This document shows, piece after piece, positions 36,783 through 62,200 of a stretch of 64,000 nucleotides of DNA. The notes beneath the pieces were generated by a model that worked only from the letters and a program-made list of their open reading frames with translations, had not been told where the DNA came from and searched no databases. The position numbers and the translations under genes are program-made. Within the stretch, counting starts at the first letter, position 1. Each line of letters starts with the position of its first letter. Source of the DNA: Macrostomum lignano (Eukaryota); assembly GCA_002269645.1 (NCBI GenBank), contig NIVC01001931.1:26292-90291 (forward strand), in the 5' to 3' direction.

Positions 36783-36815
<33 letters not shown>

Positions 36816-36861: not shown

Positions 36862-36894
<33 letters not shown>

Positions 36895-40904: not shown

Positions 40905-40974
40905 GCACTACTAAGATTCGAACCCAGATCGCTGCATTAGCAGTCCAGTCTGTTCGCATCTATGCTATCTCTTT
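40905..40974 (-). pseudogene. tRNA(Ser-GCT)-derived Pol III cassette, unit B
   Basis: Minus strand TAGCATAGATGCGAACAGA-CTGGA-CTGCTAA-TGCAG-CGAT-CTGGG-TTCGAAT-CTTAG-TAGTG followed by T7. GGACTGCTAAT resembles the eukaryotic tRNA-Ser(GCT) anticodon arm; acceptor stem and long variable arm are missing. Confidence 0.65.
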
Positions 40975-41593: not shown

Positions 41594-42165
41594 GCAAGCA
41601 TCCTCCCAGATAGCAAGCACCTCCAGATAGCAAGCATCCCCCCAGATAGCAGGCACCCCCCAGATAGCAAGCATCCCCCCAGATAGCAAGCACCCCCCAG
41701 ATAGCAGGCACCCCCCAGATAGCAAGCATCCCCCAGATAGCAAGCACCCCAGATAGCAAGCACCCCCCAGATAGCAGGCACCCCCAGATAGCAAGCATCC
41801 CCCAGATAGCAAGCACCCCAGATAGCAAGCACCCCCAGATAGCAAGCACCCCCAGATAGCAAGCACCCCAGATAGCAAGCACCCCCAGATAGCAAGCACC
41901 CCCAGATAGCAAGCACCCCCAGATAGCAAGCACCCCAGATAGCAAGCACCCCAGATAGCAAGCACCCCCAGATAGCAAGCACCCCAGATAGCAGGCACCC
42001 CAGATAGCAGGCACCCCCAGATAGCAGGCACCCCCAGATAGCAGGCACCCCCAGATAGCAGGCTCTCCCAGATAGCAAGCACCCCCAGATAGCAAGCACC
42101 ACCAGATAGCAAGCACCCCCAGATAGCAGGCTCTCCCAGATAGCAAGCACCCCCAGATAGCAGGC
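41594..42165. repeat. 17-19-bp minisatellite (CCCCAGATAGCAAGCAC), unit C
   Basis: Direct inspection. Confidence 0.95.
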
Positions 42166-45100
42166 GACATGGTGGCTTTTTACTGTTAGACATGGTGGCT
42201 CTTTAATGTTAGACATGGTGGCTCTTTAATATTAGACATGGTGGCTCTTTAATGTTCGAAATGGTGGTTCTTTAATGTTAGACATGGTGGCTCTTCTATG
42301 TTTAACAATGTGGCTCTTTAATGTTTTACATGGTGGCTCTTTTAGGTTTGACATGGTGGCTCTTTAATGTTCGACATGGTGGTTCTTTAATGTTCGACAT
42401 GGTGGCTCTTTAATATTAGACATGGTGGCTCTTTAATGTTCGAAATGGTGGTTCTTTAATGTTAGACATGGTGGCTCTTCTATGTTTAACAATGTGGCTC
42501 TTTAATGTTTTACATGGTGGCTCTTTTAGGTTTGACATGGTGGCTCTTTAATGTTCGACATGGTGGTTCTTTAATGTTCGACATGGTGGCTCTTTAATGT
42601 TCTACATGGTGGCCCTTTAATGTTCGACATGGTGGCTCTTTACTGTTAGACATGGTGGCTCTTTAATGTTCGATTTGGTGGCTCTTTAATGTTTGACATC
42701 ATGCCAGATTTATGTTTGACATGGTGGCTCTTTAATGTTCGACATGGTGGCTCTTTTAGGTTTGACATGGTGGCTCTTTACTGTTCGACATGGTGGTTTT
42801 TTAATGTTCGACATGGTGGCTCTTTAATGTTCTACATGGTGGCCCTTTAATGTTCGACATGGTGGCTCTTTACTGTTAGACATGGTGGCTCTTTAATGTT
42901 CGATATGGTGGCACTTTAATGTTTGACATCATGCCAGATTTATGTTTGACATGGTGGCTCTTTAATGTTTGACATGGTGGCTCTTTTCTGTTAGACATGG
43001 TGGGTCTTTTTGGTTTGACATGATGGCATCTTTATGTTTTGACATGGCGGCTCTTTAATGTTTTACATGGTGGCTCTTTAATGTACGACATAATGGCTCT
43101 TTTATGTTTAACAATGTGGCTCTTTAATGTTTTACATGGTGGCTCTTTAATGTTCGACATGGTGGCTCTTTAATGTTCGACATGGTGGCTCTTTAATGTT
43201 CGAAATGGTGGCTCCTTAATGTTTGACATAAAGTCACATATATGTTTGACATAAAGTCACATATATGTTTGACATAAAGTCACATATATGTTTGACATAA
43301 AGTCACATATATGTTTGACATAAAGTCACATATATGTTTGACATAAAGTCACATATATGTTTGACATAAAGTCACATATATGTTTGACATAAAGTCACAT
43401 ATATGTTTGACATAAAGTCACATATATGTTTGACATAAAGTCACATATATGTTTGACATAAAGTCACATATATGTTTGACATAAAGTCACATATATGTTC
43501 GACATGGTGGCTCTTTTTAACATCTGACATGGTGGCTCTTCTATGTTTAACATGGTGGCTCTTTTATGTTTGACATGGTGGCTCTTTAATGTTCTTCATG
43601 GTGGCTCTTTAATGTTCGACATGGTGGCTCTTTTTTGTTCGACATGGTAACTCTTTTATGTTTGATACGGTGGCTTTTTAATGTCTGACATGTTGGCTCT
43701 TTTATGTTTGACGTGGTGGCTCTTTAATGTTCGACAAAGGGGCTCTTTAATGTTTGACATGGTGGCTGTTGTTTGACATGGTGGCTCTTTAATTTTCGAA
43801 ATAGTGGCTCTTCAATGTTTGAAATGGTGGCCCTTTTATGTTTGATACGGTGGCTTTTCAATGTCTGACATGGTGGCTCTTCTATGTTTGACATGGGGGC
43901 TCCTCTTTGTTTGACATGGGGGCTCTTCTATGTTTGACATGGGAGCTCTTCTATGTTTGACAAAGTGGCTTTTTAATGTTTGACATGGTGGCTCTATTAT
44001 GTTTGACATGGTGGCTCTATTATGTTTGACATGGTGGCTCTTTAATGTTCAAAAAGGTGGCTCTTTTATGTTTGACATGGTGGCTCTTTAATGTTTGACA
44101 TGGTGGCTCTTTAATGTTTGACATGGTGGCTCTTTAATGTTAGACAAAGTAGCTCTTTAATGTTTGACATGATGGCTCTTAAATGTTAGACATGGTGGCT
44201 CTTTACTTTTTGACATGGTGGCTCTTTAATGTTGGACATGGTGGCTTTTTAATGTTAGACATGGTGGCTCTTTAATGTTCGACATAAAGTCACTTATATG
44301 TTTGACATGGTGGCTCTTTAATGTTTGACATGGTAGCTCTTTTATGTTCGACATGGTGGCTCTTTTATGTTCGAAATGGTGTCGCTTCAATGTTTGACAT
44401 GGAGTTACGTATATGTTTTACATGGTGGCTCTTTTATGTTCGACATGGTGGCTCTTTAATGTTTGACATGGGGTCTCTTCAATGTTTGACATGGAGTTAC
44501 GTATATGTTTGACATGGTGGCTCTTTAATGTTTTACATGGTGGCACTTTCATGTTTGACCTGGAGGCTCTTTAATATTTGACATGGTGGCTCTTTTATGT
44601 TTGACATGGTGGCTCTTTTATCTTTGACATGGTGGCTCTGTAATGTTCGACATGGAGTCATGTATATGTTTCACATGGTAGCTCTTAAATGTTCGACATG
44701 GTGGCTCTTTAATGTTCAACATGGAGTCATGTATATGTTTGACATGGTGGCTCTTAAATGTTCGACATAGTGGCTCTATAATGTTTGATATGGTGGCTCT
44801 TCAATGTTTGACATGGTGGCTCTTTAATGATCGACATGGCGTCATGTATATGTTTGACATGGTAGCTCTTGAATGTTCAACATGGAGTCATGTATATGTT
44901 TTACATGGTGGCTCTTAAATGTTCGACATGGTGGCTCTTTAATGTTTGACATAGTGTCTCTTTAATGTTTGACATGGAGTCATGTATATGTTTGCCATGG
45001 TGGCTCTTTAATGTTAGACATGGTGGCTCTTTTATGTTCGACATGGTGTCTCTTCAATGTTTGACATGGCGTCATGTATATGTTTTACATGGATGCTCTT

Positions 45101-46956
45101 GTATTTTTAACATGTTGACTCTTTAATGTTCGAAATGGTGGCTCTTAATTGCCTAACATGGAGTCACGTATATGTTTGACATGGAGTCATGCATATGCCT
45201 GATATGGTAGCTCTTTAATGTTTTACATGGAGTCACTTTTATGTTTCACATGTTGGCTATTTTATGTTTGACATGGTGGTTCTTAAATGTTCGACATGGT
45301 GGCTCTTTAATGTTTTACATGGTGGCACTTTCATGTTTGACCTGGTGGCTCTTTAATGTTTGACATGGTGGCTCTTTAATATTTGACATGGTGGCCCTTT
45401 TATGTTCGACATGGTGGCTCTTCAATGTTTGACATGGAGTCATGTATATGTTTGACCTGGTGGCTCTTTAATGTTTGACATGGTGGCTCTTTAATGTTTT
45501 ACATGGTGGCACTTTCATGTTTGACCTGGTGGCTCTTTAATGTTCGACATGGTCGCTCTTTAATGTTCGACATGGTGGCCCTTTAATGTTCGACATGGTG
45601 TCGCTTCAATGTTTGACATGGAGTTACGTATATGTTTTACATGGTGGCTCTTTTATGTTCGACATGGCGTCATGTATATGTTTGACATGGTAGCTCTTGA
45701 ATGTTCAACATGGAGTCATGTATATGTTTGACATGGTAGCTCTTGAATGTTCAACATGGAGTCATGTATATGTTTGACATGGTGGCTCTTAAATGTTCGA
45801 CATGGTGGCTCTTTAATGTTTGACATGGAGTCATGTATATGTTTGACATGGTAGCTCTTGAGTGTTCGACATAGAGTCATGTATATGTTTGCCATGGTGG
45901 CTCTTTAATGTTAGACATGGTGGCTCTTTTATGTTTTGCATGGTGGCTCTTTTATGTTCGACATGGTGTCTCTTCAATGTTTGACATGGAGTCATGTATA
46001 TGTTTGACATGGTGGCTCTTGCATTTTTAACATGTTGGCTCTTTAATGTTCGACATGGTGGCTCTTTAATGTCTAACATGGAGTCATGTATATGTTTGAC
46101 ATGGAGTCATGTATATGTCTGATATGGTAGCTCTTTAATGTTTTACATGGAGTCACGTATATGTTTCACATGGTGGCTATTTTATGTTTGACTTGGTGGT
46201 TCTTAAATGTTCGACATGGTGGCTCTTTAATGTGTTACATGGTGGCACTTTCATGTTTGACCTGGTGGCTCTTTAATGTTTTACATATAGTGTCTCTTTA
46301 ATGTTTGACATGGAGTCATGTATATGTTTGACATGGTAGCTCTTGAATGTTCGACATAGAGTCATGTATATGTTTGCCATGGTGGCTCTTTAATGTTAGA
46401 CATGGTGGCACTTTCATGTTTGACCTGGTGGCTCTTTAATGTTTGACATGGTGGCTCTTTAATATTTGACATGGTGGCCCTTTAATATTTGACATGGTGG
46501 CCCTTTAATGTTCGACATGGTGGCTCTTCAATGTTCGACATGGAGTCATGTATATGTTTGACCTGGTTGCTCTTTAATGTTTGACATTGTGGCTCTTTAA
46601 TGTTCGACATGGTGGCTCTTTTAGGTTTGAAATGGTGGCTCTTAAATGTTTGACATGGTGGCTTTTTAATGTTCGACATGGTGGCTCTTTTATGTTCGAC
46701 ATGGCGTCATGTATATGTTTCACATGGTAGCTCTTGAATGTTCAACATGGAGTCATGTATATGTTGGACATGGTGGCTCTTTAATGTTCGACATGGTGGA
46801 TCTTTAATGGTCGACATGGTGGCTCTTTAATGTTCGACATGGTAGCTCTTTAATGTTCGACATGGTGTCTCTTTAATGGTCGACATGGTGGCTCTTTAAT
46901 GGTCGACATGGTGGCTCTTTAATGTTTGACATGGTGGCTCTTTAATGTTTGACATT
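42166..46956. repeat. 23-bp satellite type B, unit C, including a homogeneous TATGTTTGACATAAAGTCACATA sub-array at about 43220-43500
   Basis: Direct inspection. Confidence 0.95.
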
Positions 46957-47015
46957 GTGCTTTTTTGTGTTTAGCATTTTGTGTTTTTAAGGTTTTTAAA
47001 TAAAAAAATCTTTTT

Positions 47016-47085
47016 GCACTACTAAGATTCGAACCCAGATCGCTGCATTAGCAGTCCAGTCTGTTCGCATCTATGCTATCTCTTT
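47016..47085 (-). pseudogene. tRNA(Ser-GCT)-derived Pol III cassette, unit C
   Basis: Same sequence as the unit B copy at offset +6111. Confidence 0.65.
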
Positions 47086-47704
47086 TCAATTGGAGTACAT
47101 GAAGTGTGGCCCTTATAATTAAATTCTTATAGCAAATCGGTTAGAGTAAAAAGTTATGACATAATCAATTTCTCAGTCAGCCAGTATCAGTGTCAATTCA
47201 AGTTAGCAATATTGTTACGCAATTTAAATCAAGTTTTGTGTGCATTTGTTCGGCACTGTTTTCAACTGGTTGTGATGTAATCTTTATCACAATTGGAATT
47301 CAGTCAGTCAGTTTTTTCTCTAGCATTCTTACAATGCATTTCAGGTCGAAAGAGCTGCTTGACCTTTGCAAAAAAGCATGTTTTTCGAATATTTAATCCC
47401 TTTAATATTGAGCAATTTCTTAGCCAAGATGCATGTACCGTCCCAGGAAAATTTCTGATCGAATGGTGCAAGTTTGAAGAAAATCGGTTGAGCCATTTTT
47501 TCTGAAATCTATCGCATACCTACCCACATACAGACAACTCATTTTTAGTATATAGGACTAGCAATCTTCGCCCCCCGATGGGGGACATCTAGATAGAATC
47601 TCTGTTCTCTACAAGTATCAATAAGATGGCCAAACAAAGCCTTCACATAGTCAATAGAAAAACTGCTCAGATGAAGTGCAACGCGAAAAGAAAACATCCT
47701 TAGA

Positions 47705-48279
47705 CAGCAAGCATCCTCCCAGATAGCAAGCACCTCCAGATAGCAAGCATCCCCCCAGATAGCAGGCACCCCCCAGATAGCAAGCATCCCCCCAGATAGC
47801 AAGCACCCCCCAGATAGCAGGCACCCCCCAGATAGCAAGCATCCCCCAGATAGCAAGCACCCCAGATAGCAAGCACCCCCCAGATAGCAGCACCCCCCAG
47901 ATAGCAAGCATCCCCCAGATAGCAAGCACCCCAGATAGCAAGCACCCCCAGATAGCAAGCACCCCCAGATAGCAAGCACCCCAGATAGCAAGCACCCCCA
48001 GATAGCAAGCACCCCCAGATAGCAAGCACCCCCAGATAGCAAGCACCCCAGATAGCAAGCACCCCAGATAGCAAGCACCCCCAGATAGCAAGCACCCCCA
48101 GATAGCAGGCACCCCCAGATAGCAGGCACCCCCAGATAGCAGGCACCCCCAGATAGCAGGCACCCCCAGATAGCAGGCTCTCCCAGATAGCAAGCACCCC
48201 CAGATAGCAAGCACCACCAGATAGCAAGCACCCCAGATAGCAGGCTCTCCCAGATAGCAAGCACCCCCAGATAGCAGGC
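47705..48279. repeat. 17-19-bp minisatellite, unit D
   Basis: Direct inspection. Confidence 0.95.
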
Positions 48280-50726
48280 GACATGGTGGCTTTTTACTGT
48301 TAGACATGGTGGCTCTTTAATGTTAGACATGGTGGCTCTTTAATATTAGACATGGTGGCTCTTTAATGTTCGAAATGGTGGTTCTTTAATGTTAGACATG
48401 GTGGCTCTTCTATGTTTAACAATGTGGCTCTTTAATGTTTTACATGGTGGCTCTTTTAGGTTTGACATGGTGGCTCTTTAATGTTCGACATGGTGGTTCT
48501 TTAATGTTTGACATGGTGGCTCTTTAATGTTCTACATGGTGGCCCTTTAATGTTCGACATGGTGGCTCTTTACTGTTAGACATGGTGGCTCTTTAATGTT
48601 CGATTTGGTGGCTCTTTAATGTTTGACATCATGCCAGATTTATGTTTGACATGGTGGCTCTTTAATGTTCGACATGGTGGCTCTTTTAGGTTTGACATGG
48701 TGGCTCTTTACTGTTCGACATGGTGGTTTTTTAATGTTCGACATGGTGGCTCTTTAATGTTCTACATGGTGGCCCTTTAATGTTCGACATGGTGGCTCTT
48801 TACTGTTAGACATGGTGGCTCTTTAATGTTCGATATGGTGGCACTTTAATGTTTGACATCATGCCAGATTTATGTTTGACATGGTGGCTCTTTAATGTTT
48901 GACATGGTGGCTCTTTTCTGTTAGACATGGTGGGTCTTTTTGGTTTGACATGATGGCATCTTTATGTTTTGACATGGCGGCTCTTTAATGTTTTACATGG
49001 TGGCTCTTTAATGTACGACATAATGGCTCTTTTATGTTTAACAATGTGGCTCTTTAATGTTTTACATGGTGGCTCTTTAATGTTCGACATGGTGGCTCTT
49101 TAATGTTCGACATGGTGGCTCTTTAATGTTCGAAATGGTGGCTCCTTAATGTTTGACATAAAGTCACATATATGTTTGACATAAAGTCACATATATGTTT
49201 GACATAAAGTCACATATATGTTTGACATAAAGTCACATATATGTTTGACATAAAGTCACATATATGTTTGACATAAAGTCACATATATGTTTGACATAAA
49301 GTCACATATATGTTTGACATAAAGTCACATATATGTTTGACATAAAGTCACATATATGTTTGACATAAAGTCACATATATGTTTGACATAAAGTCACATA
49401 TATGTTTGACATAAAGTCACATATATGTTCGACATGGTGGCTCTTTTTAACATCTGACATGGTGGCTCTTCTATGTTTAACATGGTGGCTCTTTTATGTT
49501 TGACATGGTGGCTCTTTAATGTTCTTCATGGTGGCTCTTTAATGTTCGACATGGTGGCTCTTTTTTGTTCGACATGGTAACTCTTTTATGTTTGATACGG
49601 TGGCTTTTTAATGTCTGACATGTTGGCTCTTTTATGTTTGACGTGGTGGCTCTTTAATGTTCGACAAAGGGGCTCTTTAATGTTTGACATGGTGGCTGTT
49701 GTTTGACATGGTGGCTCTTTAATTTTCGAAATAGTGGCTCTTCAATGTTTGAAATGGTGGCCCTTTTAGGTTTGACATGGTGGCTCTTAAATGTTTCACA
49801 TGGTGGCTCTTTAATTTTTAACATGGTGCCTTTTTGATGTTCTTCATGATATAGCTCTTTTATGTTACACATGGTGGCACTTTAATGTTCGACATGGTGG
49901 CTCTTTAATGTTTGACATAAAGTCACATATATGTTTGACATGGTGGCTCTTTAATGTTCTTCATGGTATAGCTCTTTTATGTTAGACATGGTGGCTCTTT
50001 AATGTTTCGACATAGTGGCTTTTTAAGGTTTGAAATGGTAACTCTTTAATGTTTGACATAAAGTCACATATATGTTTGACATGGTGGCTCCTAAATGTTC
50101 GACATGGTGGCTCTTTTTTGTTCTACATGGTAACTCTTTTATGTTTGATACGGTCGCTTTTTAATGTCTGACATGTTGGCTCTTTTATGTTTGACATGGT
50201 GGCTCTTTAATGTTCGACAAAGTGGCTCTTTAATGTTTGACATGGTGGCTCTTAAATGTTTGACATGGTGGCTCTCTAATGTTCGACATGGTGGCTCTTT
50301 AATGTTCGACATGGTGGCTCTTTAATGTTCGACATGGTGGCTCTTTAATGTTTGACATGGTGGCTTCTAATTGTTTGACATGGTGGCTCTTTAATGTTCA
50401 AAATGGTGGCTCTTTAATGTTCGAAATGGTGGCTCTTTAATGTTCGAAATGGTGGCTCTTTTATGTTTGACATGGTGGCTCTTTTATGTTTGACCTGGTG
50501 GCTCTTTTATGTTTGACATGGTGGCTCTTTTATGTTTGACCTGGTGGCTCTTTTATGTTTGACATGGTGGCTCTTTTATGTTTGACATGGTGGCTCTTTT
50601 ATGTTTGACATGGTGGCTCTTTTATGTTTGACATGGTGGCTCTTTTATGTTTGACATGGTGGCTCTTTTATGTTTGACATGGTGGCTCTTTAATGTTCGA
50701 CATGGTGGCTCTTCTATGTTTGACAT
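48280..50726. repeat. 23-bp satellite type B, unit D, including the ATAAAGTCAC sub-array at about 49150-49430
   Basis: Direct inspection. Confidence 0.95.
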
Positions 50727-50792
50727 TGCGCTTCTTTGATGTTTAGCAGTTTTGTTGTGTTTTTAAGGTGTTTTAATAAAAAAAATCTTTTT

Positions 50793-50862
50793 TTACTACT
50801 AAGATTCGAACCCAGGTTGCTACATTAGCATTCCAGTCTGTTCGCATCTAGGCTATCTCTTT
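50793..50862 (-). pseudogene. tRNA-derived Pol III cassette, unit D
   Basis: Minus strand TAGCCTAGATGCGAACAGACTGGAATGCTAATGTAGCAACCTGGGTTCGAATCTTAG followed by an oligo-T run. Confidence 0.6.
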
Positions 50863-51653
50863 TTAATTGGAGAACATGAATTGTGGCCCTTATAATTCAA
50901 TTCTTACAGCAAGTCAATCGGAGTAAAAAGTTATGACATAATCAATTTTTCAGTCAGCCAGAATCAGTCTCAATTTAAGTTGGCAATATGGTTATGCAAT
51001 TTCATTCAAGTCGTGTGTGCATTTCTTTGACACTGTTTTCAACTTGTTGTGATGCAATCTTTATCACAATCGGAATTCAGCCAGTCAGTTTTTTCTCTAG
51101 CATTCTTACAATGCATTTCAAGTCGAAAATTTTGCTTGACCTTTGCAAAAAAGCATGTTTTTCGAATATTTAATCCCTTTAACATTGAGCAATTTCTTAG
51201 CCAAGATGCATGTACCGTCCCAGGAAAATTTCTGATCGAATGGTGCAAGTTTGAAAAAAATCGGTTGAGCCGTTTTTTCTGGAATCTATCGCATACCTAC
51301 CTACCCACAGACAACTCATTTTTAGTATATAGGATTGCAGAGCTAGGTAGACATCAAACTTTTAGTTGTAGCAAAGACTATAATTATAATTAGTCTGTAA
51401 TAATAGCCAGATCGAGCAAAAATCTGGTTGTCTGTAGTCTGCCTGATGGCGAGTAGTTTTTGTACTCGTTTTAATTTTAATGAGTTATAGAATTTTACGA
51501 GGTGAAAGCTCGCTTAAAATAAAATTTTCAATGAACGGGCCGGGATGATGATTCTTCTAAAATGAAAAGTTGCGCCATACAAAAGAGTCCCTGCCAACAT
51601 TTAACAAGTAGCTAGAAAATTAACTCATCCAGAAGAATTAAATCGCATAGTCT

Positions 51654-51799
51654 TAGTCTATGGTTCATAGTCTATGGCCTGACTCACAATCTTTCTTGCG
51701 TCTCTGTACGTCTGTCAGTCTAACTGTACAACTAAAAGTTCATTGAGACAAGTTGGGCTGCTCAACGTTTCTGAAACTCGCATTGAACCATAGACTATG
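51654..51799. mobile_element. Possible 145-bp MITE with inverted ends TAGTCTATGGTTC / GAACCATAGACTA
   Basis: 13-bp perfect inverted repeat at 51654-51666 and 51785-51797; TSD not clearly defined. Confidence 0.35.
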
Positions 51800-51945
51800 C
51801 TTATCTGACGGAGTTGATTTTGTTATATCTGCTCTATCTGGCGTGCAAATCGAATTGCCTTGGAATCGACCCTAGATTCTCCTGTAAAAAGTTATCACTT
51901 GATTTTTAAATTGACAAAACCTCGAATTTCGGCTCAAATTTTGCA

Positions 51946-52631
51946 ATGCATCTCCGTTGCATTCTGGGTATGGCCACGTGCCTGTTGGCCATCCAACTGC
52001 TTTCTGCCTCGGTTGATCGGCCATCGACGTTTAACCCAGTCGAACTCAAGTCATCGCGACTGCCTTTTTTGCGAGCCTGGTCAAGCATAAGGTGAGAAAA
52101 AATCATATTTTTATTATGTCCATGCTTTTCTAGTTAATGCGCAATGGGATCGGCAAACGAATTTTATCTGTCATAACTGCATGCAGTCCAGGAGGGAGAA
52201 GAGAGTATAGAGAAGAGGCGAGAGAAAATAGATGAGAGACGAGAGAAAAGAGGAGAAAGGAGAGGAGGGAGGGTAGAGGAGAGAGGAGAGATAGTAGAGG
52301 ATAGAGAGAGTTGCTGAGAAGAGACAAACCTTAAGTTGTTCTGATTGCTTTTACATGTATGAAATTGAAAAGGACCCGAATTAATGAATAAAATAAATGG
52401 TTGTTTTATTTTAGTGTTGAACTAAATTTCTGACATTCTATTATTCTATTGAATGATATATTTTCCCCTTATAGTCTCGCAGACTGATGGGAAACTGTTC
52501 ATTTAATTTTTAGAATGAGATGTGCTCAACGTGGTGGAAGTTGCGGCCAAGATTGGTTCGGGTACAAGAGTTGCTGCAATGGCCAACACAAGTGCACTCG
52601 CACTGTATTTGGTGCCTCCTATTGTTATTGA
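51946..52631 (+). CDS. Secreted cystine-knot (ICK/knottin, CBM1-like spacing) prepropeptide, 87 aa; exons 51946-52091 and 52514-52631
   Basis: Exon 1 MHLRCILGMATCLLAIQLLSA-SVDRPSTFNPVELKSSRLPFLRAWSSI ends AG|GTGAGA (phase 2). Exon 2 follows a TTTAATTTTTAG acceptor and begins with A, completing Arg, then MRCAQRGGSCGQDWFGYKSCCNGQHKCTRTVFGASYCY*. Intron phases match, there are no stops, and AATAAA lies at 52721-52726. Confidence 0.85.
52190..52322. repeat. Imperfect (AG/GAGAG)n purine tract inside the knottin-gene intron
   Basis: Direct inspection. Confidence 0.85.
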
Positions 52632-53657
52632 ACAGCTCAGAACAATTCAATCAAATTGAACCTTTGTTATAACAGTTTAAAGCTAACATGAAAGTTTTTT
52701 GGCGCTGAGATTAAAAAACAAATAAACAAGAAATACTTCAAAAATGAACTATTGTTTTTGTTTGTCAAAAATTCGCGCAACAACTGCATAAAAAGATGGC
52801 AAGTTGCATACACGTACATGACTTTATTGCACTAAACAATGCAAAAGATACAGCCACGTGGCACCCACAAGTGTACAGCACCCAGTCGCTACAACTGTTA
52901 TACATGTAGTTTTGCACCATATATACTCAACAGCATTAAAAAGTCGCCACCTTTGAAAGTGCGCAGTGAAATACAGCTCAGTGTTGACTTTTGAGTGACG
53001 CAACTTGCGCCACGCGACGCAGAGTTGGGAGCGGGTGAGGAGGGATTGGGAAGAGCGGAGGGCGAAGATTTGATGGATTGAAGCTTCCGCCCGGTTTTCA
53101 TTGTTTTTTCATTTAATTTATCAAAATGGTTGGCCAGGTGATAAACGCTGGTCGAAAGACACTGCTCACTGGGGCAAAGGGTGGCCAGCGACTTTGTTGC
53201 TGTCAAGGATAGACGCCTTTTTTCTTCATTCAAATTGGTGCGCGTCCGTCAGCAGTCAGACGTGGCAGCGTGGCGGAGACGGACAAGCCAAAGAAATTGG
53301 CCATAGACAACAGAAATCTGCTTGGTTTTACTCTTGGAAGGAATGACTGAAGTAAAGAATGGCGCAGAGAGGACCATGCGCTAGTCCTGGGAACAGGGAG
53401 TCAGAGCATGCATACGTGACATGGCAATGTGGAGTTTGATGTTCTTTGGTTAACTTAGATTTTTCTATTTTGTCCATTTTTACTATTTCTCACGGGGTCC
53501 CGGAGAATTTAGTGTACGAGTGATTTTTGAATTGCTTGATGCAATCTAAAGTGAACTCTAATAGTGAAGCACCCCGATGAAGCTACCCAATCAGTTTTCT
53601 CGTATCTTTTATTTCAGAACAGTCCAAGAGAAATTGGTCACTGGCGCATAGAGTGGC

Positions 53658-54262
53658 GACACCACAGCCTCGACACCACAGCCTCGACACCACAGGTCCT
53701 CGATACCACAGCCTCGACACCACAGCCTCGATACCACAGCCTCGACACCACAGCCTCGATACCACAGCCTCGACACCACAGCCTCGATACCACAGCCTCG
53801 ATACCACAGCCTCGATACCACAGCCTCGACACCATAGCCTCGATACCACAGCCTCGATACCACAGCCTCGATACCACAGCCTCGATACCACAGCCTCGAT
53901 AGCCTCGATACCACAGCCTCGATACCACAGCCTCGATACCACAGCCTCGACACCACAGGTCCTCGATACCACAGCCTCGACACCACAGCCTCGATACCAC
54001 AGCCTCGACACCACAGCCTCGATACCACAGCCTCGACACCACAGCCTCGATACCACAGCCTCGACACCACAGCCTCGACACCATAGCCTCGATACCACAG
54101 CCTCGATAGCCTCGATACCACAGCCTCGATAGCCTCGATACCACAGCCTCGATACCACAGCCTCGATACCACAGCCTCGATACCACAGCCTCGATACCAC
54201 AGCCTCGATACCACAGCCTCGATATCACAGCCTCGATACCACAGCCTCGATACCACAGCCTC
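53658..54262. repeat. 14-bp minisatellite (CGATACCACAGCCT), about 40 copies
   Basis: Direct inspection; source of the VVSRLWYRGCGIEA ORFs. Confidence 0.95.
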
Positions 54263-55233
54263 GCGGCTGAAACTCTGGTCATGAGTTGGCACGCTCAGAT
54301 GGGGTATATCGGAGCCGGAAATAATTAGCATGTATAGTCGGGCCAGTGCGAGACTCGGACTTATCTACCTTTAAGTACAATTAAAATTAAAATTCAAATT
54401 CAAATCAACAAAATCTCGGAATAATTTCTGTTGAATCACGGATGCCCGTTAGCAGGACATCGCGGCCATAATTTCGAAATTATTTACTGGATCATTTTTA
54501 AATTGTTTAATATTTAGCTTTGTCTATTATAATATAATTACAGACAATATTATAATAATGTTACCAGTGCGCGCAGAGTATAAAAGACGGAACGAACTAA
54601 GCATAGAAAGTACACACAGATCGGGCAGTGTTGGGTCCCAGAGCTCAATAGCATTCGAAGTTGTTTGAACTGTGCGGTGAGAACTCTGGGTCTCAGGTTA
54701 ATTGTGTCGCTAAGGAATGCGGCACTGGGTGCTCCAAGCCAGGCCGGTCCAGCATGTACATCAAGAAAGGCCACTTCGTTAACGATCGCTGATAAAAGTA
54801 CAAAATTGGAATGCGTGGGCGTACAACGGACCAACGAGACCCAACGGTTTAAAGTACTACATGATCTGTTAAAAAAAGCAAGACTCAATTAAATTTCATT
54901 ATGCAGAAACAATAACTGTAAAGCCTAGGGAATGTAGTGAATGTTTTAGCAGCAATATACGGGTAAGCAAAATTATGAATAAATAAAAACAACTGGACAC
55001 TTAGGCATGCACTGTTGAAGGAAAACTTTTGGGATAAACAAAGCATTAACAAGGGAGACTTACAAATAGTATTAGCGATTCAGTAACGCAAAACCGAACG
55101 ACAGCAACGCTGCAAAGAAGCATCAAAAGATTGAATTTGCAAATTCACAGCGCGGAGCAGATGGAATGCGAATAATTTTCACCGCATCTGTGCGCTGGAA
55201 CGCCTGGTCCGACCGAAACATGCATGTGAGAAA

Positions 55234-58200
55234 GGTTTGTGGGCGATTCTTTAGGAGCGGCTTGTGGGCGATTCCTTCTGAGCGGCTTGTGGGCGATTCT
55301 TTAGGAGCGGCTTGTGGGCGATTCCTTCTGAGCGGCTTGTGGGCGATTCTTTAGGAGCGGCTTGTGGGCGATTCCTTCTGAGCGGCTTGTATGCGATTCT
55401 TTAGGAGCGGCTTGTGGGCGATTCTTTATGAGCGGCTTGTGGGCGATTCTTTAGGAGCGGCTTGTGGGCGATTCTTTATGAGCGGCTTGTGGGCGATTCT
55501 TTATGAGCGGCTTGTGGGCGATTCTTTAGGAGCGGCTTGTGGGCGATTCTTTATGAGCGGCTTGTGGGCGATTCTTTATGAGCGGCTTGTGGGCGATTCT
55601 TTAGGAGCGGCTTGTGGGCGATTCTTTATGAGCGGCTTGTGGGCGATTCTTTAGGAGCGGCTTGTGGGCGATTCTTTATGAGCGGCTTGTGGGCGATTCT
55701 TTAGGAGCGGCATGTGGGCGATTCTTTGGGAGTGGCTTGTGGGCGATTCTTTGGAGTGGCTTGTGGGCGATTCCTTCTGAGCGGATTGTGGGCGATTCTT
55801 TATGAGCGGCTTGTGGGCGATTCTTTAGGAGCGGCTTGTGGGCGATTCTTTAGGAGCGGCTTGTGGGCGATTCTTTAGGAGCGGCTTGTGGGCGATTCTT
55901 TATGAGCGGCTTGTGGGCGATTCTTTAGGAGCGGCTTGTGGGCGATTCTTTATGAGCGGCTTGTGGGCGATTCTTTAGGAGCGGCTTGTGGGCGATTCTT
56001 TATGAGCGGCTTGTGGGCGATTCTTTAGGAGCGGCTTGTGGGCGATTCTTTGGGAGTGGCTTGTGGGCGATTCTTTGGGAGTGGCTTGTGGGCGATTCCT
56101 TCTGAGCGGATTGTGGGCGATTCTTTGGGAGTGGCTTGTGGGCGATTCCTTCTGAGCGGATTGTGGGCGATTCTTTGGGAGTGGCTTGTGGGCGATTCTT
56201 TAGGAGTGGCTTGTGGGCGATTCTGTGGGAGTGGCTTGTGGGCGATTCTTTAGGAGTGGCTTGTGCGCGATTCTTTGGGAGTGGTTTGTGGGCGATTCCT
56301 TCTGAGCGGATTGTGGGCGATTCTTTGGGAGTGGCTTGTGGGCGATTCTTTAGGAGTGGCTTGTGGGCGATTCTGTGGGAGTGGCTTGTGGGCGATTCTT
56401 TAGGAGTGGCTTGTGCGCGATTCTTTGGGAGTGGTTTGTGGGCGATTCCTTCTGAGCGGATTGTGGGCGATTCTTTGGGAGTGGCTTGTGGGCGATTCTT
56501 TAGGAGTGGCTTGTGGGCGATTCTTTGGGAGTGGCTTGTGGGCGATTCTTTAGGAGTGGCTTGTGGGCGATTCTTTAGGAGCGGTTTGTGGGCGATTCTT
56601 TAGGAGTGGCTTGTGGGCGATTCTTTAGGAGTGGCTTGTGGGCGATTCTTTAGGAGTGGCTTGTGGGCGATTCTTTAGGAGCGGTTTGTGGGCGATTCTT
56701 TAGGAGTGGCTTGTGGGCGATTCTTTGGGAGTGGCTTGTGGGCGATTCTTTAGGAGTGGCTTGTGGGCGATTCTTTAGGAGCGGCTTGTGGGCGATTCTT
56801 TATGAGCGGCTTGTGGGCGATTCTTTAGGAGCGGCTTGTGGGCGATTCTTTATGAGCGGCTTGTGGGCGATTCTTTAGGAGCGGCTTGTGGGCGATTCTT
56901 TGGAGTGGCTTGTGGGCGATTCTTTGGAGTGGCTTGTGGGCGATTCCTTCTGAGCGGATTGTGGGCGATTCTTTGGGAGTGGCTTGTGGGCGATTCCTTC
57001 TGAGCGGATTGTGGGCGATTCTTTGGGAGTGGCTTGTGGGCGATTCTTTAGGAGTGGCTTGTGGGCGATTCTGTGGGAGTGGCTTGTGGGCGATTCTTTA
57101 GGAGTGGCTTGTGCGCGATTCTTTGGGAGTGGTTTGTGGGCGATTCCTTCTGAGCGGATTGTGGGCGATTCTTTGGGAGTGGCTTGTGGGCGATTCTTTA
57201 GGAGTGGCTTGTGGGCGATTCTGTGGGAGTGGCTTGTGGGCGATTCTTTAGGAGTGGCTTGTGCGCGATTCTTTGGGAGTGGTTTGTGGGCGATTCCTTC
57301 TGAGCGGATTGTGGGCGATTCTTTGGGAGTGGCTTGTGGGCGATTCTTTAGGAGTGGCTTGTGGGCGATTCTTTGGGAGTGGCTTGTGGGCGATTCTTTA
57401 GGAGTGGCTTGTGGGCGATTCTTTAGGAGCGGTTTGTGGGCGATTCTTTAGGAGTGGCTTGTGGGCGATTCTTTAGGAGTGGCTTGTGGGCGATTCTTTA
57501 GGAGTGGCTTGTGGGCGATTCTTTAGGAGCGGTTTGTGGGCGATTCTTTAGGAGTGGCTTGTGGGCGATTCTTTGGGAGTGGCTTGTGGGCGATTCTTTA
57601 GGAGTGGCTTGTGGGCGATTCTTTAGGAGCGGCTTGTGGGCGATTCTTTATGAGCGGCTTGTGGGCGATTCTTTAGGAGCGGCTTGTGGGCGATTCTTTA
57701 TGAGCGGCTTGTGGGCGATTCTTTAGGAGCGGCTTGTGGGCGATTCTTTGGGAGTGGCTTGTGGGCGATTCTTTGGGAGTGGCTTGTGGGCGATTCCTTC
57801 TGAGCGGATTGTGGGCGATTCTTTGGGAGTGGCTTGTGGGCGATTCCTTCTGAGCGGATTGTGGGCGATTCTTTGGGAGTGGCTTGTGGGCGATTCTTTA
57901 GGAGTGGCTTGTGGGCGATTCTGTGGGAGTGGCTTGTGGGCGATTCTTTAGGAGTGGCTTGTGCGCGATTCTTTGGGAGTGGTTTGTGGGCGATTCCTTC
58001 TGAGCGGATTGTGGGCGATTCTTTGGGAGTGGCTTGTGGGCGATTCTTTAGGAGTGGCTTGTGGGCGATTCTGTGGGAGTGGCTTGTGGGCGATTCTTTA
58101 GGAGTGGCTTGTGCGCGATTCTTTGGGAGTGGTTTGTGGGCGATTCCTTCTGAGCGGATTGTGGGCGATTCTTTGGGAGTGGCTTGTGGGCGATTCTTTA

Positions 58201-59162
58201 GGAGTGGCTTGTGGGCGATTCTGTGGGAGTGGCTTGTGGGCGATTCTTTAGGAGTGGCTTGTGCGCGATTCTTTGGGAGTGGTTTGTGGGCGATTCCTTC
58301 TGAGCGGATTGTGGGCGATTCTTTGGGAGTGGCTTGTGGGCGATTCTTTAGGAGTGGCTTGTGGGCGATTCTTTGGGAGTGGCTTGTGGGCGATTCTTTA
58401 GGAGTGGCTTGTGGGCGATTCTTTAGGAGCGGTTTGTGGGCGATTCTTTAGGAGTGGCTTGTGGGCGATTCTTTAGGAGTGGCTTGTGGGCGATTCTTTA
58501 GGAGTGGCTTGTGGGCGATTCTTTAGGAGCGGTTTGTGGGCGATTCTTTAGGAGTGGCTTGTGGGCGATTCTTTGGAGTGGCTTGTGGGCGATTCTTTAG
58601 GAGTGGCTTGTGGGCGATTCTTTAGGAGCGGTTTGTGGGCGATTCTTTAGGAGTGGCTTGTGGGCGATTCTTTAGGAGTGGCTTGTGGGCGATTCTTTAG
58701 GAGTGGCTTGTGGGCGATTCTTTAGAAGTGGCTTGTGGGCGATTCTTTAGGAGTGGCTTGTGGGCGATTCTTTAGGAGCGGCTTGTGGACGATTCTTTAG
58801 GAGCGGATTGTGGGCGATTCTTTAGGAGCGGCTTCTGGGCGATTCTTTAGGAGCGGCTTGTGGGCGATTCTTTAGGAAGGAGCGGCTTGTGGGCGATTCT
58901 TTAGGAAGGCGCGGCTTGTGGGCGATTCTTTAGGAAGGAGTGGCTTGTGGGCGATTCTTCAGGAGCGGCTTGTGGGTGATTATTCCTTGTGGGCGTTTCT
59001 TCAGGAGCGGCTTGTGGGTGATTATTCCTTGTGGGCGTTTCTTTAGGAGCGGCTTGTGTGCGATTCTTTAGGAGTGAAGCGGCTTGTGGGCGATTCTTTA
59101 GGAGCGGTGATTATTCCTTGTGGGCGATTCTTTAGGAGCGGCTTGTGTGCGATTCTTTAGGA
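55234..59162. repeat. 25-bp satellite (GCGGCTTGTGGGCGATTCTTTAGGA), about 155 copies, with 150-bp and about 850-bp higher-order repeats
   Basis: ORF-track translations recur every 50 aa (6 monomers) and at offsets 848-850 (56038/56886/57736; 56136/56984/57834; 56663/57511). Confidence 0.95.
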
Positions 59163-59293
59163 TCGATCCTTATCGAACCCTAGGAGTCGATACAAAAGCA
59201 TAATTAAGCTATTAGGAGGGAATTTTCACAAGGAAAATTATGAATAATGTTAATACGCAGAGCAAGTCAGTTACAGAAACATTTCCAAAACAA

Positions 59294-62200
59294 TCAATAA
59301 TGCAGAGCAAGCAGGCGCGCCAGGCCAGCCAGCGCCAGCGCCCACAGGGAAGCGCGCAGCCCGGCGCCGGAACAGATGAACACGTAGCGCACGTCCGGCG
59401 CCTCCCAGCTGGCGCCGGGCACGCAGCGGTCCTTGGGGATGAGCATGAACTGGATCATCGGGCTGCTGTAGGTGCCGATGCCGCCAGACGAATAGGCGTA
59501 CACCCGGAGGTCGTAGCGAGTCTCGCTGGACAAGTAGCGGACCGTCACCTCGTTGCTGAGGCCGGCGTCAACGTCCGTGAAGTTCACGGCTGGGGCGCCC
59601 GTCACCCAGTAGCGCACCTGGCCGGAGCGGGCGTGATGTCAATGAGCACCCCTTCGACGAACTTCAGTTAGCTGCAAATCCCTCCCTTCTGATCCTTCAG
59701 GTAGCTGCTAATCCCTCCCTTCTGATCCTTCAGGTAGCTGCAAATCCCTCCCTTCTGATCCTTCAGGTAGCTGCTAATCCCTCCCTTCTGATCCTTTAGG
59801 TAGCTGCTAATCCCTCCCTTCTGATCCTTCAGGTAGCTGCTAATCCCTCCCTTCTGATCCTTCAGGTAGCTGCTAATCCCTCCTTTCTGATCCTTCAGGT
59901 AGCTGCTAATCCCGCTTTTGTTCTCCTTCAGGTAGCTGCTAATCCCTCCCTTCTGATCCTTCAGGTAGCTGCTAATCCCTCCCTTCTGATCCTTCAGGTA
60001 GCTGCAAATCCCTCCCTTCTGATCCTTCAGGTAGCTGCTAATCCCTCCCTTCTGATCCTTCAGGTAGCTGCAAATCCCTCCCTTCTGATCCTTCAGGTAG
60101 CTGCTAATCCCTCCCTTCTGATCCTTCAGGTAGCTGCTAATCCCTCCCTTCTGATCCTTTAGGTAGCTGCTAATCCCTCCCTTCTGATCCTTCAGGTGAC
60201 TGCAAATCCCTCCCTTCTGATCCTTCAGGTGACTGCAAATCCCTCCCTTCTGATCCTTCAGGTAGCTGCTAATCCCTCCCTTCTGATCCTTTAGGTAGCT
60301 GCTAATCCCTCCCTTCTGATCCTTCAGGTGACTGCAAATCCCTCCCTTCTGATCCTTCAGGTGACTGCAAATCCCTCCCTTCTGATCCTTCAGGTAGCTG
60401 CTAATCCCTCCCTTCTGATCCTTTAGGTAGCTGCTAATCCCTCCCTTCTGATCCTTCAGGTAGCTGCTTATCCCTCCCTTCTGATCCTTCAGGTGGCTGC
60501 AAATCCCTCCCTTCTGATCCTTCAGGTAGCTGCTAATCCCTCCCTTCTGATTCTTTAGGTAGCTGCTAATCCCTCCCTTCTGATCCTTCAGGTAGCTGCA
60601 AATCCCTCCCTTCTGATCCTTCAGGTGACTGCAAATCCCTCCCTTCTGATCCTTTAGGTAGCTGCTAATCCTCCCTTCTGATCCTTCAGGTAGCTGCAAA
60701 TCCCTCCCTTCTGATCCTTCAGGTAGCTGCAAATCCCTCCCTTCTGATCCTTCAGGTAGCTGCTAATCCCTTTTGACGAATTCTTCAGCCGACTGCTAAT
60801 CCCTCTTGACTAATCCTTCAGCCGACTGTTAATCCCTCTTGACTAATCCTTCAAGCGACTGCTAATCCTTCCAGCGACTGCTAATCCCTCTTGACTAATC
60901 CTTCAAGCGACTGCTAATCTTTCTTCACTAATCCTTCAAGCGACTGCTAATCCCTCTTGACTAATCCTTCAAGCGACTGCTAATCTTTCTTCACTAATCC
61001 TTCAAGCGACTGCTAATCCTTCTTCGCTAATTCTTCAAGCGACTGCTAATCCCTCTTGACTAACCCTTCAAGCGACTGCTACTCCCTCTTCCGTGGTCAT
61101 GAGGCGGCCGCCAAACCCCAGTCCCTCACCATATATCCATCCACGCTCTCCTCATTGGGCTGCTGCCGGACGCCGTTCCAGGTGACGCTGATGCTGCTGT
61201 ACTCGCCAGTGCTGTGCACCACCACGTTGGTTGGCAGGTCTGTCGGCCACATCTTATTGGTTGAGACGTCGCGCCAAGAGGACTCGGGCTGTCGCCGGCT
61301 GAGTTGAACAGCTGCACGCTGAAGCAGTAGAAGCTGTCGGCCTCCAGCCCGATCACCTGGCCGTAGGTGGCCTTGCCGTAGGTGGTCTGGCGCTGGGCCA
61401 GCAGCACCTTGTACTTGTTGTTTTCCACGCTGCAAGCGGAGGCGATTCTGGGCCAGTAGACGATGCGGTAGCCGAGGATGTCGCCAACGATGCCATCATA
61501 GTTCAGCGGCGGCTCCCAGAACACGTCAACAGCGGTGGCGTTGAACGGAGTGATCCGGATATTGATGGGGGCGCTGACCGGCACCTGCTCGGCGCTGCGG
61601 AGTCTGCCAAGAGATGATGAGGGAGAAAACTTTTGTAGCAGAATTTTATCCGTTATACTGGATGAGCTTGACAGAGGGGTAGGGACCGAAGGAGAAAGTA
61701 GATTGTGAGGGAGAGAGTAGGGAGTGAAGGAGAGAGTAGGGAGTGAAGGAGAGAGCAGGGAGTGAAGGAGAGAGTAGGGAGTGAGGGAGAGAGCAGGGAG
61801 TGAAGGAGAGAGTAGGTAGTGAGGGAGAGAGCAGAGAGTGAAGGAGAGAGCAGGGAGTGAAGGAGAGAGTAGGTAGTGAGGGAGAGAGCAGAGAGTGAAG
61901 GAGAGAGAGAGAGTATGGAGTGAAGGAGAGAGAGTAGGGAGTGAAGGAGAGAGTAGGTAGTGAGGGAGAGAGCAGGGAGTGAAGGAGAGAGTAGGGAGTG
62001 AGGGAGAGAGCAGGGAGTGAAGGAGAGAGTAGGTAGTGAGGGAGAGAGCAGAGAGTGAAGGAGAGAGAGAGTAGGGAGTGAAGGAGAGAGAGAGTAGGGA
62101 GTGAAGGAGAGAGTAGGTAGTGAGGGAGAGAGCAGGGAGTGAAGGAGAGAGTAGGGAGTGAGGGAGAGAGCAGGGAGTGAAGGAGAGAGTAGGTAGTGAG

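What the first reader, a model, noticed from the sequence alone, without database searches (positions are those of the whole stretch)
51946..52726. Hidden two-exon gene for a secreted toxin-like cystine-knot peptide with CBM1-identical cysteine spacing
Seen: an 87-aa precursor absent from the ORF track because both exons are short. Signal peptide MHLRCILGMATCLLAIQLLSA, propeptide ending R-M-R, mature CAQRGGSCGQDWFGYKSCCNGQHKCTRTVFGASYCY. Canonical phase-matched intron and AATAAA 90 nt after the stop. Established: signal-pro-mature layout with C-C-CC-C-C is the architecture of conotoxin framework VI/VII and spider ICK toxins. The spacing C-X6-C-X9-CC-X5-C-X9-C is that of the six-Cys CBM1 of Trichoderma reesei Cel6A ([35 protein letters not shown], quoted from memory), and GQDWFG echoes GQNWSG. 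The flat aromatic face of CBM1 (W before GQC, YY before SQC) is not conserved. Inference: an undescribed venom, defence, antimicrobial or reproductive peptide, or a repurposed and possibly horizontally acquired CBM1-like knottin, wedged between a Helitron array and satellites.
Basis: partly seen in the sequence, partly recalled or inferred. Interest (0 to 1): 0.9.

Follow-up and report, generated by a model that had tools for sequence, protein, structure and literature searches.

The report
Unannotated flatworm gene for cysteine-rich peptide
A small two-exon gene missing from the Macrostomum lignano annotation probably encodes a secreted six-cysteine peptide with a toxin-like cysteine framework, but it has no detectable relatives, is not a fungal cellulose-binding module, and has no expression evidence yet.

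Summary
Window 51946-52091 plus 52514-52631 splices in phase (GTGAGA donor, TTTAATTTTTAG acceptor) into an 87-aa precursor. It has a signal-peptide-like N-terminus, a C-terminal C-x6-C-x9-CC-x5-C-x9-C domain, and AATAAA 89 nt after the stop. The window is Macrostomum lignano contig NIVC01001931.1, whose deposited annotation has no gene here.

My rough chance model gives about 1e-5 such arrangements per 64 kb window. Exons are 51% GC against 36-37% for the intron and 5' flank. A real or recently real gene is therefore the best reading.

The CBM1 link is spacing only: there is no Pfam CBM_1 hit, non-Cys identity is 3/30, and the profile score is no better than Cys-preserving shuffles. No homologue was found in 1.84 billion proteins, the PDB, Pfam, prokaryotic genomes or metagenomes, but these hold no other Macrostomum data. 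The ICK fold is untested, because the AlphaFold models were uninformative. The R-M-R cleavage site is not canonical, and GC3 is far below that of neighbouring genes.

Verdict: a plausible lineage-restricted secreted cysteine-rich peptide gene, of modest interest until RNA evidence exists.

The parts
51796..51862 (+). 67-bp dispersed repeat copy in the putative promoter region, 84-150 nt upstream of the ATG. It is probably a transposable-element fragment, and its role is unknown.
   Evidence: 97% identical to window 26738-26804. No comparable gene lies downstream of the other copy.
51885..51911 (+). A/T-rich TATA-like elements (TAAAAAG at 51885-51891, TTTAAAT at 51905-51911), 35-61 nt upstream of the ATG. 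Possible core promoter; this is inference only.
   Evidence: Read directly from the sequence. No transcription-start data were available.
51946..52091 (+). Exon 1 coding part: start codon (G at -3), signal peptide (codons 1-21, 51946-52008, predicted cleavage LSA|SV), and most of a basic 30-residue pro-region.
   Evidence: My hydrophobicity and (-3,-1) heuristic is met. AF2 places a helix at residues 3-23, at low confidence.
52092..52513 (+). Phase-2 GT-AG intron of 422 nt (GTGAGA ... TTTAATTTTTAG) with a purine-rich GA tract at about 52190-52320.
   Evidence: GC is 36% against 51% in the exons. The average M. lignano intron is 1.1-1.4 kb (PMC5730564).
52514..52631 (+). Exon 2 coding part: R-M-R, then the 36-residue six-Cys domain (52521-52628) CAQRGGSCGQDWFGYKSCCNGQHKCTRTVFGASYCY, then the TGA stop (52629-52631).
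   Evidence: The domain is 3973 Da, pI 8.65, net charge about +2.8, 17% aromatic.
52632..52745 (+). Putative 3' UTR with the AATAAA poly(A) signal at 52721-52726. The end coordinate is approximate.
   Evidence: The cleavage site itself is not known.

Best explanation
This is an unannotated, lineage-restricted protein-coding gene of Macrostomum lignano, at contig NIVC01001931.1 positions about 78237-79017, plus strand. It makes an 87-aa secretory precursor. Inferred mechanism: the N-terminal signal peptide takes the chain into the ER and is cut after Ala21. The six cysteines of the C-terminal 36 residues form three disulfides, giving a small, cationic, aromatic-rich, protease-resistant module that is most likely knottin-like. 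The basic 30-residue pro-region is either removed after Arg51 or retained. The peptide is released from a gland or epithelial cell and acts outside the cell by binding a target. My preferred role is a defence or antimicrobial peptide, or a reproductive (seminal-fluid type) peptide, rather than a prey-capture venom, because M. lignano is a diatom grazer. Shown: the gene structure and the Cys framework. Inferred: expression, secretion, processing, disulfide pattern, fold and role.
For: The splice structure, phase, start, stop and AATAAA are exact. This is the only ICK-like Cys pattern in the window, with the exact spacing in 0/200 shuffles and the relaxed pattern at 0.075 per shuffle. A signal-peptide-like exon with a consensus donor is rare, at 0.0064 per kb per strand. 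The joint chance expectation is about 1e-5 per window, or about 0.1 per 764 Mb genome. The GC step from exons to intron and flank is 51% against 36-37%. The reading frames close immediately outside the proposed exon edges. The gene lies in a 2.3 kb segment that is unique within the window (51335-53656). Absence from the annotation has an explanation: coding potential was assigned with TransDecoder (PMC5730564), whose default minimum ORF is 100 aa (my knowledge). The first half of the framework, C-x6-C-x9-CC, occurs in a solved spider ICK toxin, 2LL1. Orphan secreted proteins are documented in this animal: 31 of 76 prostate-limited transcripts had no BLAST hit and 38 of 65 had signal peptides (PMC5977470). 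Reproduction-related genes evolve fast in the genus (PMC7336406).
Against: There is no transcript, proteomic or conservation evidence. No homologue or paralogue was found anywhere I could search. GC3 is 51%, against 82-87% in the two neighbouring conserved genes, so the gene lacks the local codon bias. R-M-R is not a canonical convertase site. The basic pro-region (pI 11.8) would be unusual for a cationic antimicrobial peptide, which typically has an anionic pro-region (my knowledge). The AF2 models are low to moderate confidence and did not retrieve any knottin. The gene sits in satellite- and repeat-rich DNA.
Confidence: 0.6

Rival explanations
1. It is a non-functional ORF: a never-expressed fortuitous arrangement, a decaying relic of a former gene, or a very young proto-gene that makes no stable peptide.
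For: No homologues or paralogues. Not annotated. GC3 is near background and far from the neighbouring genes. The processing site is non-canonical. The context is repeat-rich, with a dispersed repeat fragment in the promoter region. The first-stage reader selected on exactly these features, so some selection bias applies.
Against: The joint chance expectation is about 1e-5 per window and about 0.1 per genome. The ORF is intact, with all signals in the right order and spacing. There is an exon/intron GC step. The stop comes one residue after the last Cys, as is typical of such peptides.
Confidence: 0.33
2. It is a genuine CBM1 (fungal-type cellulose-binding module), possibly acquired horizontally and repurposed.
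For: The six-Cys spacing is identical to the T. reesei Cel6A CBM1, and that recalled sequence is validated as CBM_1 by Pfam at 58 bits.
Against: No CBM_1 hit for the candidate at E<=10. It scores 1.1 bits against a CBM1 mini-profile with filters off, and 194/1000 Cys-preserving shuffles score as high; non-Cys identity is 3/30. The flat-face aromatic positions (5, 31, 32) are G, G, A in the candidate. There is no QCGG motif in register. It is a stand-alone peptide with a spliceosomal intron, not attached to a linker and catalytic domain. No donor-like sequence was found in prokaryotic genomes or metagenomes or among 1.84 billion proteins.
Confidence: 0.02
3. It is an ICK neurotoxin in the narrow sense: a venom or defensive peptide that blocks or modulates ion channels of prey or predators, like conotoxin framework VI/VII or spider toxins.
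For: The C-C-CC-C-C framework, a signal-pro-mature-like layout and a cationic, aromatic-rich surface. Half of the framework matches the spider toxin 2LL1.
Against: No similarity to any toxin family in Pfam or the PDB. No tandem paralogue cluster, although toxin genes usually form one. M. lignano has no known venom apparatus and grazes on diatoms (my knowledge). No flatworm ICK toxin is reported in the searchable literature.
Confidence: 0.1
4. It is a prohormone or neuropeptide-like signalling peptide, that is, an endogenous cysteine-rich ligand.
For: A small signal-peptide-bearing precursor of the kind annotation pipelines routinely miss. Several monobasic sites lie in the pro-region. Knottin-type endogenous neuropeptides exist in arthropods (agatoxin-like peptides; my knowledge, not tested here).
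Against: There are no dibasic cleavage sites and no C-terminal amidation signal (the peptide ends ...CY-stop). No homologues exist, whereas hormones are usually conserved at least within a phylum.
Confidence: 0.07

Closest known systems
Inhibitor cystine knot (knottin) peptides: conotoxin framework VI/VII and spider ICK toxins such as U1-TRTX-Sp1a (PDB 2LL1)
   Same: Six Cys in the C-C-CC-C-C order, about 36 residues, a secretory precursor with the Cys-rich domain at the extreme C-terminus, and a cationic, aromatic character. The C-x6-C-x9-CC half matches 2LL1.
   Different: No sequence similarity to any such family. The full loop-length set was not found in any solved structure. Disulfide connectivity and fold are unknown. 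The gene is single-copy in the window, and the pro-region lacks the usual cleavage motifs.
Fungal CBM1, six-Cys variant (T. reesei Cel6A)
   Same: Identical Cys spacing, C-x6-C-x9-CC-x5-C-x9-C, and similar length.
   Different: It fails the Pfam CBM_1 profile. Non-Cys identity is 3/30. The cellulose-binding aromatic face and the QCGG motif are absent. It is not appended to an enzyme, and it is an animal gene with an intron. As I recall, CBM1 disulfides pair 1-3, 2-5, 4-6, which is not the ICK pairing.
Knottin-type host-defence peptides: Mytilus CRP-I (PMC10138031), plant Mj-AMP/PAFP-S, insect Alo-3
   Same: Small secreted cationic knottin-framework peptides from non-venomous organisms, often lineage-restricted and missed by annotation. 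The first loop C-x3-G-G-x-C resembles CIGNGGRC and CIKNGGRC, which I recall from memory and did not test.
   Different: No detectable sequence relationship. Loop lengths differ. CRP-I has eight Cys and occurs as a large, variable gene family.
Orphan secreted prostate-limited (putative seminal fluid) transcripts of M. lignano (Weber et al. 2018, PMC5977470)
   Same: Same species. These are short secreted proteins with signal peptides and no BLAST homologues, and they evolve fast.
   Different: I could not test whether this gene is among them, because no transcript sequences were accessible. Nothing links it to the prostate.

Membership tests
Inhibitor cystine knot (knottin) | Six cysteines in the order C-C-CC-C-C within about 25-45 residues | tested here: met
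   C-x6-C-x9-CC-x5-C-x9-C in 36 residues. The exact spacing was seen in 0 of 200 shuffles.
Inhibitor cystine knot (knottin) | Disulfide connectivity 1-4, 2-5, 3-6, with the third bond threading the ring | not testable with these tools
   This needs a folded peptide with disulfide mapping or NMR.
Inhibitor cystine knot (knottin) | Compact triple-stranded antiparallel beta-sheet fold | tested here: inconclusive
   The single-sequence AF2 model has pLDDT 71.8 and four short strands, including a hairpin between Cys5 and Cys6. Foldseek against the PDB gave only noise at E>3. The precursor model has pLDDT 55.5.
Inhibitor cystine knot (knottin) | Sequence or profile similarity to a described knottin or toxin family | tested here: not met
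   No Pfam family at E<=10 apart from an irrelevant SMRP1 hit. PDB phmmer returned only spurious hits.
Venom-type signal-pro-mature precursor | Signal peptide followed by a propeptide that ends in a recognised cleavage motif (KR/RR, R-X-K/R-R, or the spider PQM) | tested here: inconclusive
   The signal peptide meets my heuristic; SignalP was not run. The junction I-R-M-R|C has Arg at P1 and P3 only, so no canonical motif is present (read from the sequence; cleavage rules from my knowledge).
CBM1 (Pfam PF00734) | Scores above threshold against the CBM_1 profile | tested here: not met
   Not listed at E<=10, while the Cel6A CBM positive control scores 58 bits. The unfiltered mini-profile gives 1.1 bits, and 194/1000 Cys-preserving shuffles reach that score.
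CBM1 (Pfam PF00734) | Three-aromatic flat cellulose-binding face (positions 5, 31, 32) and the G-Q-C-G-G motif | tested here: not met
   In the Cys-anchored ungapped alignment the candidate has G, G, A at those positions and GSCGQ in place of GQCGG. Non-Cys identity is 3/30. The roles of these positions are from my knowledge.
CBM1 (Pfam PF00734) | Cys spacing of the six-Cys subtype | tested here: met
   Spacing is identical to the Cel6A CBM sequence, which Pfam validates as CBM_1.
CBM1 (Pfam PF00734) | Binds crystalline cellulose; usually joined by a linker to a carbohydrate-active enzyme | not testable with these tools
   Binding needs an experiment. On architecture, the peptide stands alone, with a stop one residue after the last Cys.

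The most novel reading that the evidence does not exclude
This is the first knottin-type secreted peptide gene of a flatworm, and the visible member of a Macrostomum-specific family of short genes that are systematically missing from the annotation. It could be a bioactive toxin, an antimicrobial peptide or a seminal-fluid manipulator. Alternatively, given its near-background codon usage and repeat-rich setting, it could be a recently born disulfide-rich peptide gene. The exact match to the six-Cys CBM1 spacing would then be convergence on a loop-length solution that folds well.
Probability: 0.2. Interest if true: 0.55.

Novelty: new member of a known kind. Interest (0 to 1): 0.3.

Why it matters
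If the gene is expressed, it shows that the M. lignano annotation misses short secreted cysteine-rich peptides, probably through a minimum ORF length. That class often carries the most interesting biology in invertebrates, including defence, toxins and sexual conflict. It would also be a first candidate knottin from Platyhelminthes in a model with transgenesis and RNAi, so its function could be tested directly. A single orphan peptide with no family, no expression data and no demonstrated fold is a lead rather than a discovery. The CBM1 and horizontal-transfer angle, which drove the high first-stage score, does not hold up.

Tried and rejected
1. A word-indexed search of 5.8 billion proteins found no candidate.
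2. Exhaustive phmmer over 1.84 billion representatives gave one hit, P0121, a bacterial 1299-aa protein with Ig-like repeats. I rejected it: only Cys1 aligns, the match crosses the pro/mature boundary, and the score is a short WSS..C..GG.G..W.G motif summed over eight repeats.
3. PDB phmmer gave Perforin-like protein 1 at E 0.002. I rejected it because the cysteines are not aligned.
4. Pfam gave only SMRP1 at E 0.079, which is irrelevant.
5. tblastn and a regex scan found no paralogue in the window or in the 21 kb of the duplicate contig that I could fetch.
6. I tried to obtain an independent copy through the neighbouring FN3 gene. The locus returned was the window's own contig.
7. The UBE2K gene led to a duplicate contig, NIVC01001922.1, that is 98.4-98.9% identical and collinear to at least window 18.4 kb. 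The candidate's counterpart would lie more than 30 kb beyond the 10 kb fetch limit, and no called gene there could serve as a handle.
8. Exact look-ups of the 87-aa, 38-aa and 49-aa products found none in the 15-billion collection.
9. Pattern plus tblastn scans of JGI metagenomes and GTDB genomes found nothing.
10. AF2 and Foldseek were uninformative.
11. A Cys-only profile against the PDB gave only the half-framework match to 2LL1.
12. Rfam on 50.7-53.7 kb returned only a sub-threshold snoRNA hit, and not in the gene.
13. The bacterial promoter/terminator scan is irrelevant for a eukaryote and showed no enrichment.
14. Literature searches for flatworm knottin or ICK peptides found nothing specific. 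The 'fungistatic metabolite' prostate transcripts of Weber et al. are a different class, with alignments of about 230 aa.
15. The attempt to build an M. lignano splice-site model from neighbouring genes recovered only one clean intron.
Full report
**Source and context.** The window is the last 64 kb of contig NIVC01001931.1 of the Macrostomum lignano assembly Mlig_3_7 (GCA_002269645.1). Window position equals contig position minus 26291. Three results establish this. A UBE2K-like ORF at 7746-8306 (minus strand) is 100% identical to UniRef A0A1I8GTA6 of M. lignano. The locus fetched through the FN3 gene BOX15_Mlig025164g1 is 100% identical to window 50000-64000 over 14,001 bases. A second fetch through UBE2K confirms the coordinate offset. 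The candidate lies in a 2.3 kb segment, 51335-53656, that is unique within the window. On one side is a 23-bp satellite array ending at 50744 plus a repeated element reaching 51334. On the other side is a 14-bp satellite starting at 53657. In the 14.4 kb of the deposited annotation that I could see, only the FN3 gene is called, and nothing is called at the candidate.

**The observation.**
- Exon 1 is 51946-52091 and starts at an ATG with G at -3.
- The donor is AG|GTGAGA at 52092, the only GT[AG]AG in 51900-52700.
- The intron is 422 nt and ends TTTAATTTTTAG.
- Exon 2 is 52514-52631 and ends with TGA.
- The phase-2 junction gives an 87-aa product.
- AATAAA lies at 52721-52726, 89 nt after the stop.
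- Outside the proposed exon edges the frames close at once. Exon 1 runs into a stop one codon after the donor, and the exon-2 frame is open for only nine codons upstream of the acceptor.
- The exons are 51% GC, against 36% for the intron and 37% for the 5' flank.

**Is it chance?** The exact Cys spacing never appeared in 200 dinucleotide-preserving shuffles of the window. A relaxed C-C-CC-C-C pattern appeared 0.075 times per shuffle. In the real window this is the only instance in six frames, even though the satellites create many Cys-rich ORFs. By my own heuristic, a signal-peptide-like first exon ending in a consensus donor appears 0.0064 times per kb per strand in shuffles. The heuristic requires a basic n-region, a 10-residue uncharged stretch with mean Kyte-Doolittle hydrophobicity of at least 2.0, and small residues at -3 and -1. 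Only two such exons exist in the real window, one of them this exon. With a 1/3 phase match and p = 0.039 for AATAAA at the right distance, the joint expectation is about 1e-5 per window, or about 0.1 for the whole 764 Mb assembly. This model is rough, and shuffles underestimate the structure of real DNA. Even so, it makes a purely fortuitous arrangement unlikely.

**Why the gene is missing from the annotation.** The Mlig_3_7 gene set was derived from transcript models whose coding potential was assigned with TransDecoder (PMC5730564). To my knowledge its default minimum ORF is 100 aa, so an 87-aa product would be dropped even if it is transcribed. Absence from the annotation is therefore uninformative. 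The reported average intron of 1.1-1.4 kb makes a 422-nt intron ordinary.

**Homology searches.** None of them found a credible relative.
- The word-indexed search found no candidate.
- The exhaustive phmmer over 1.84 billion representatives found one hit, P0121. It is a bacterial 1299-aa repeat protein, and the match is an artefact. Only the first Cys aligns, the other five fall opposite non-Cys residues, the alignment crosses the pro/mature boundary, and the score accumulates over eight copies of a short motif.
- Pfam gives nothing relevant at E<=10.
- PDB sequences give only spurious matches.
- The window has no paralogue.
- The exact sequences of the precursor and of both exon ORFs are absent from the 15-billion-protein collection.
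- Pattern plus tblastn scans of JGI metagenomes and of 185,579 prokaryotic genomes found nothing.

There is an important caveat. For UBE2K the next-best hits after M. lignano itself are a 77% M. lignano paralogue and then molluscs and others at up to 69%. The databases therefore hold no other Macrostomum species and apparently no M. lignano transcript assemblies. The negative result excludes close relatives in annotated proteomes and in prokaryotes. It does not exclude conservation within the genus or unannotated paralogues.

**The duplicate contig.** A copy of the region exists. Contig NIVC01001922.1 carries an identical UBE2K protein and is 98.4-98.9% identical and collinear with the window out to at least 18.4 kb. 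This is as expected for this neopolyploid (PMC10733133, title and abstract). The candidate's counterpart would be more than 30 kb beyond what I could fetch, and no called gene there gives a handle. The single most accessible comparative test therefore remains undone.

**The CBM1 claim.** The recalled Cel6A CBM sequence is a valid CBM1, scoring 58 bits against Pfam PF00734, and its Cys spacing is indeed identical to the candidate's. Nothing else is shared.
- The candidate is not listed against CBM_1 even at E<=10.
- With filters off, it scores 1.1 bits against a mini-profile built from three CBM1 sequences: two taken from PDB alignments, plus the recalled Cel6A sequence. Of 1000 Cys-preserving shuffles, 194 score at least as well.
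- Non-Cys identity in the Cys-anchored alignment is 3 of 30.
- The GQDWFG/GQNWSG echo is off by one position when the cysteines are aligned.
- The three aromatic flat-face positions are G, G and A in the candidate.

The peptide also stands alone, has a spliceosomal intron, and has no donor-like relative anywhere. It is not a CBM1 and there is no sign of horizontal transfer. The shared spacing is best read as coincidence or convergence.

**The ICK/toxin claim.** The C-C-CC-C-C framework is met, but that is the only defining feature I could confirm. A profile carrying information only at the six Cys positions (alignment A1) retrieved just one relevant solved structure from the PDB. That is the tarantula ICK toxin U1-TRTX-Sp1a (2LL1), which matches the first half, C-x6-C-x9-CC, at E 0.017. 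No chain has the full spacing. AlphaFold2 without an alignment gave a moderate model of the 38-mer: pLDDT 71.8, with four short strands including a hairpin between Cys5 and Cys6, which is compatible with either a knottin or a CBM1-like sheet. Foldseek returned only kinase N-lobe noise. The full precursor model is poor (pLDDT 55.5) and shows only an N-terminal helix over residues 3-23. Fold and disulfide connectivity are therefore untested.

**Processing and product.** The proposed propeptide cut after R-M-R is an assumption. Arg sits at P1 and P3 only, so this is neither a dibasic site, nor R-X-K/R-R, nor a monobasic site with a basic P4, P6 or P8 (rules from my knowledge). The secreted form could equally be the 66-residue species. 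The putative 36-mer is 3973 Da, pI 8.65, net charge about +2.8 and 17% aromatic. The pro-region is strongly basic, with pI 11.8.

**Points against a well-established gene.** GC3 is 51%, whereas the UBE2K and FN3 exons nearby have GC3 of 87% and 82%. The gene therefore lacks the local codon bias, as expected for a young, weakly expressed or non-functional ORF. A 67-bp dispersed repeat fragment sits 84-150 nt upstream of the ATG.

**Conclusion.** The best explanation is a real but unannotated, lineage-restricted gene for a small secreted three-disulfide peptide (confidence about 0.6). The main rival is a non-functional or proto-genic ORF (about 0.33). M. lignano has many orphan secreted prostate transcripts: 31 of 76 have no BLAST hit (PMC5977470). 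Reproduction-related genes evolve fast in the genus (PMC7336406). The animal has no known venom system. This preference is inference. In the searchable literature I found no report of ICK-type peptides characterised from flatworms. If confirmed, this would be a new member of a known kind in a new phylum. That is modestly interesting, and well below the first-stage score, which rested largely on the CBM1 and horizontal-transfer idea that fails here.

Noticed in passing
window 7746-8306 (-), and L003 (NIVC01001922.1:66589-87462): A UBE2K-like E2 gene (UBC plus UBA domains, two exons) is present in near-identical copies on at least three contigs of the assembly. Contig NIVC01001922.1 is 98.4-98.9% identical and collinear with window 3-18.4 kb, consistent with the neopolyploid genome. 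Gene models differ between the copies: a 224-aa gene on one and a 328-aa RING-finger gene on the other, upstream of UBE2K.
   Followed up: partly
window 51796-51862 and 26738-26804: A 67-bp segment is 97% identical between the candidate's putative promoter region and a site 25 kb away. It is probably a fragment of a dispersed repeat. No similar small gene lies downstream of the second copy.
   Followed up: partly
window 53421-53501 (+): A weak full-length match to the C/D-box snoRNA family snoZ175 (RF00318): 33.1 bits against a gathering score of 43, E 0.014. It lies about 700 nt downstream of the candidate gene and is probably chance.
   Followed up: no
window 59602-63606 (-): The annotated FN3 gene BOX15_Mlig025164g1 (299 aa) has coding exons at about 63484-63606, 62412-62726 and 61117-61626. 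Its annotated extent runs on through the 33-bp satellite (59662-60771), so the 3' UTR appears to contain a satellite array. A 19-bp repeat (61679-62383) fills an intron and creates a long spurious ORF. The gene converges on the candidate from about 6.9 kb away.
   Followed up: partly
window 35000-50744, 53657-54263, 55237-59104: There are very large tandem arrays: a 23-bp unit over about 13 kb with an embedded duplication of about 6.1 kb (41447-42193 against 47545-48330, each with a 17-bp array), a 14-bp unit and a 25-bp unit. The segment 50772-51295 is 75% similar to 36235-36785.
   Followed up: no
window 52190-52320 (candidate intron): A purine-rich GA-type low-complexity tract of about 130 nt sits inside the intron.
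   Followed up: no
P0121 (bacterial protein, 1299 aa): The only database 'hit' is a GC-rich bacterial surface protein with at least eight Ig-like repeats that share the motif W-S-S-x3-C-x-A-x-G-G-x-x-G-D-G-W-x-G. It shows how summed repeat matches can push a spurious hit to E about 1e-5 against a short Cys/Gly-rich query.
   Followed up: yes
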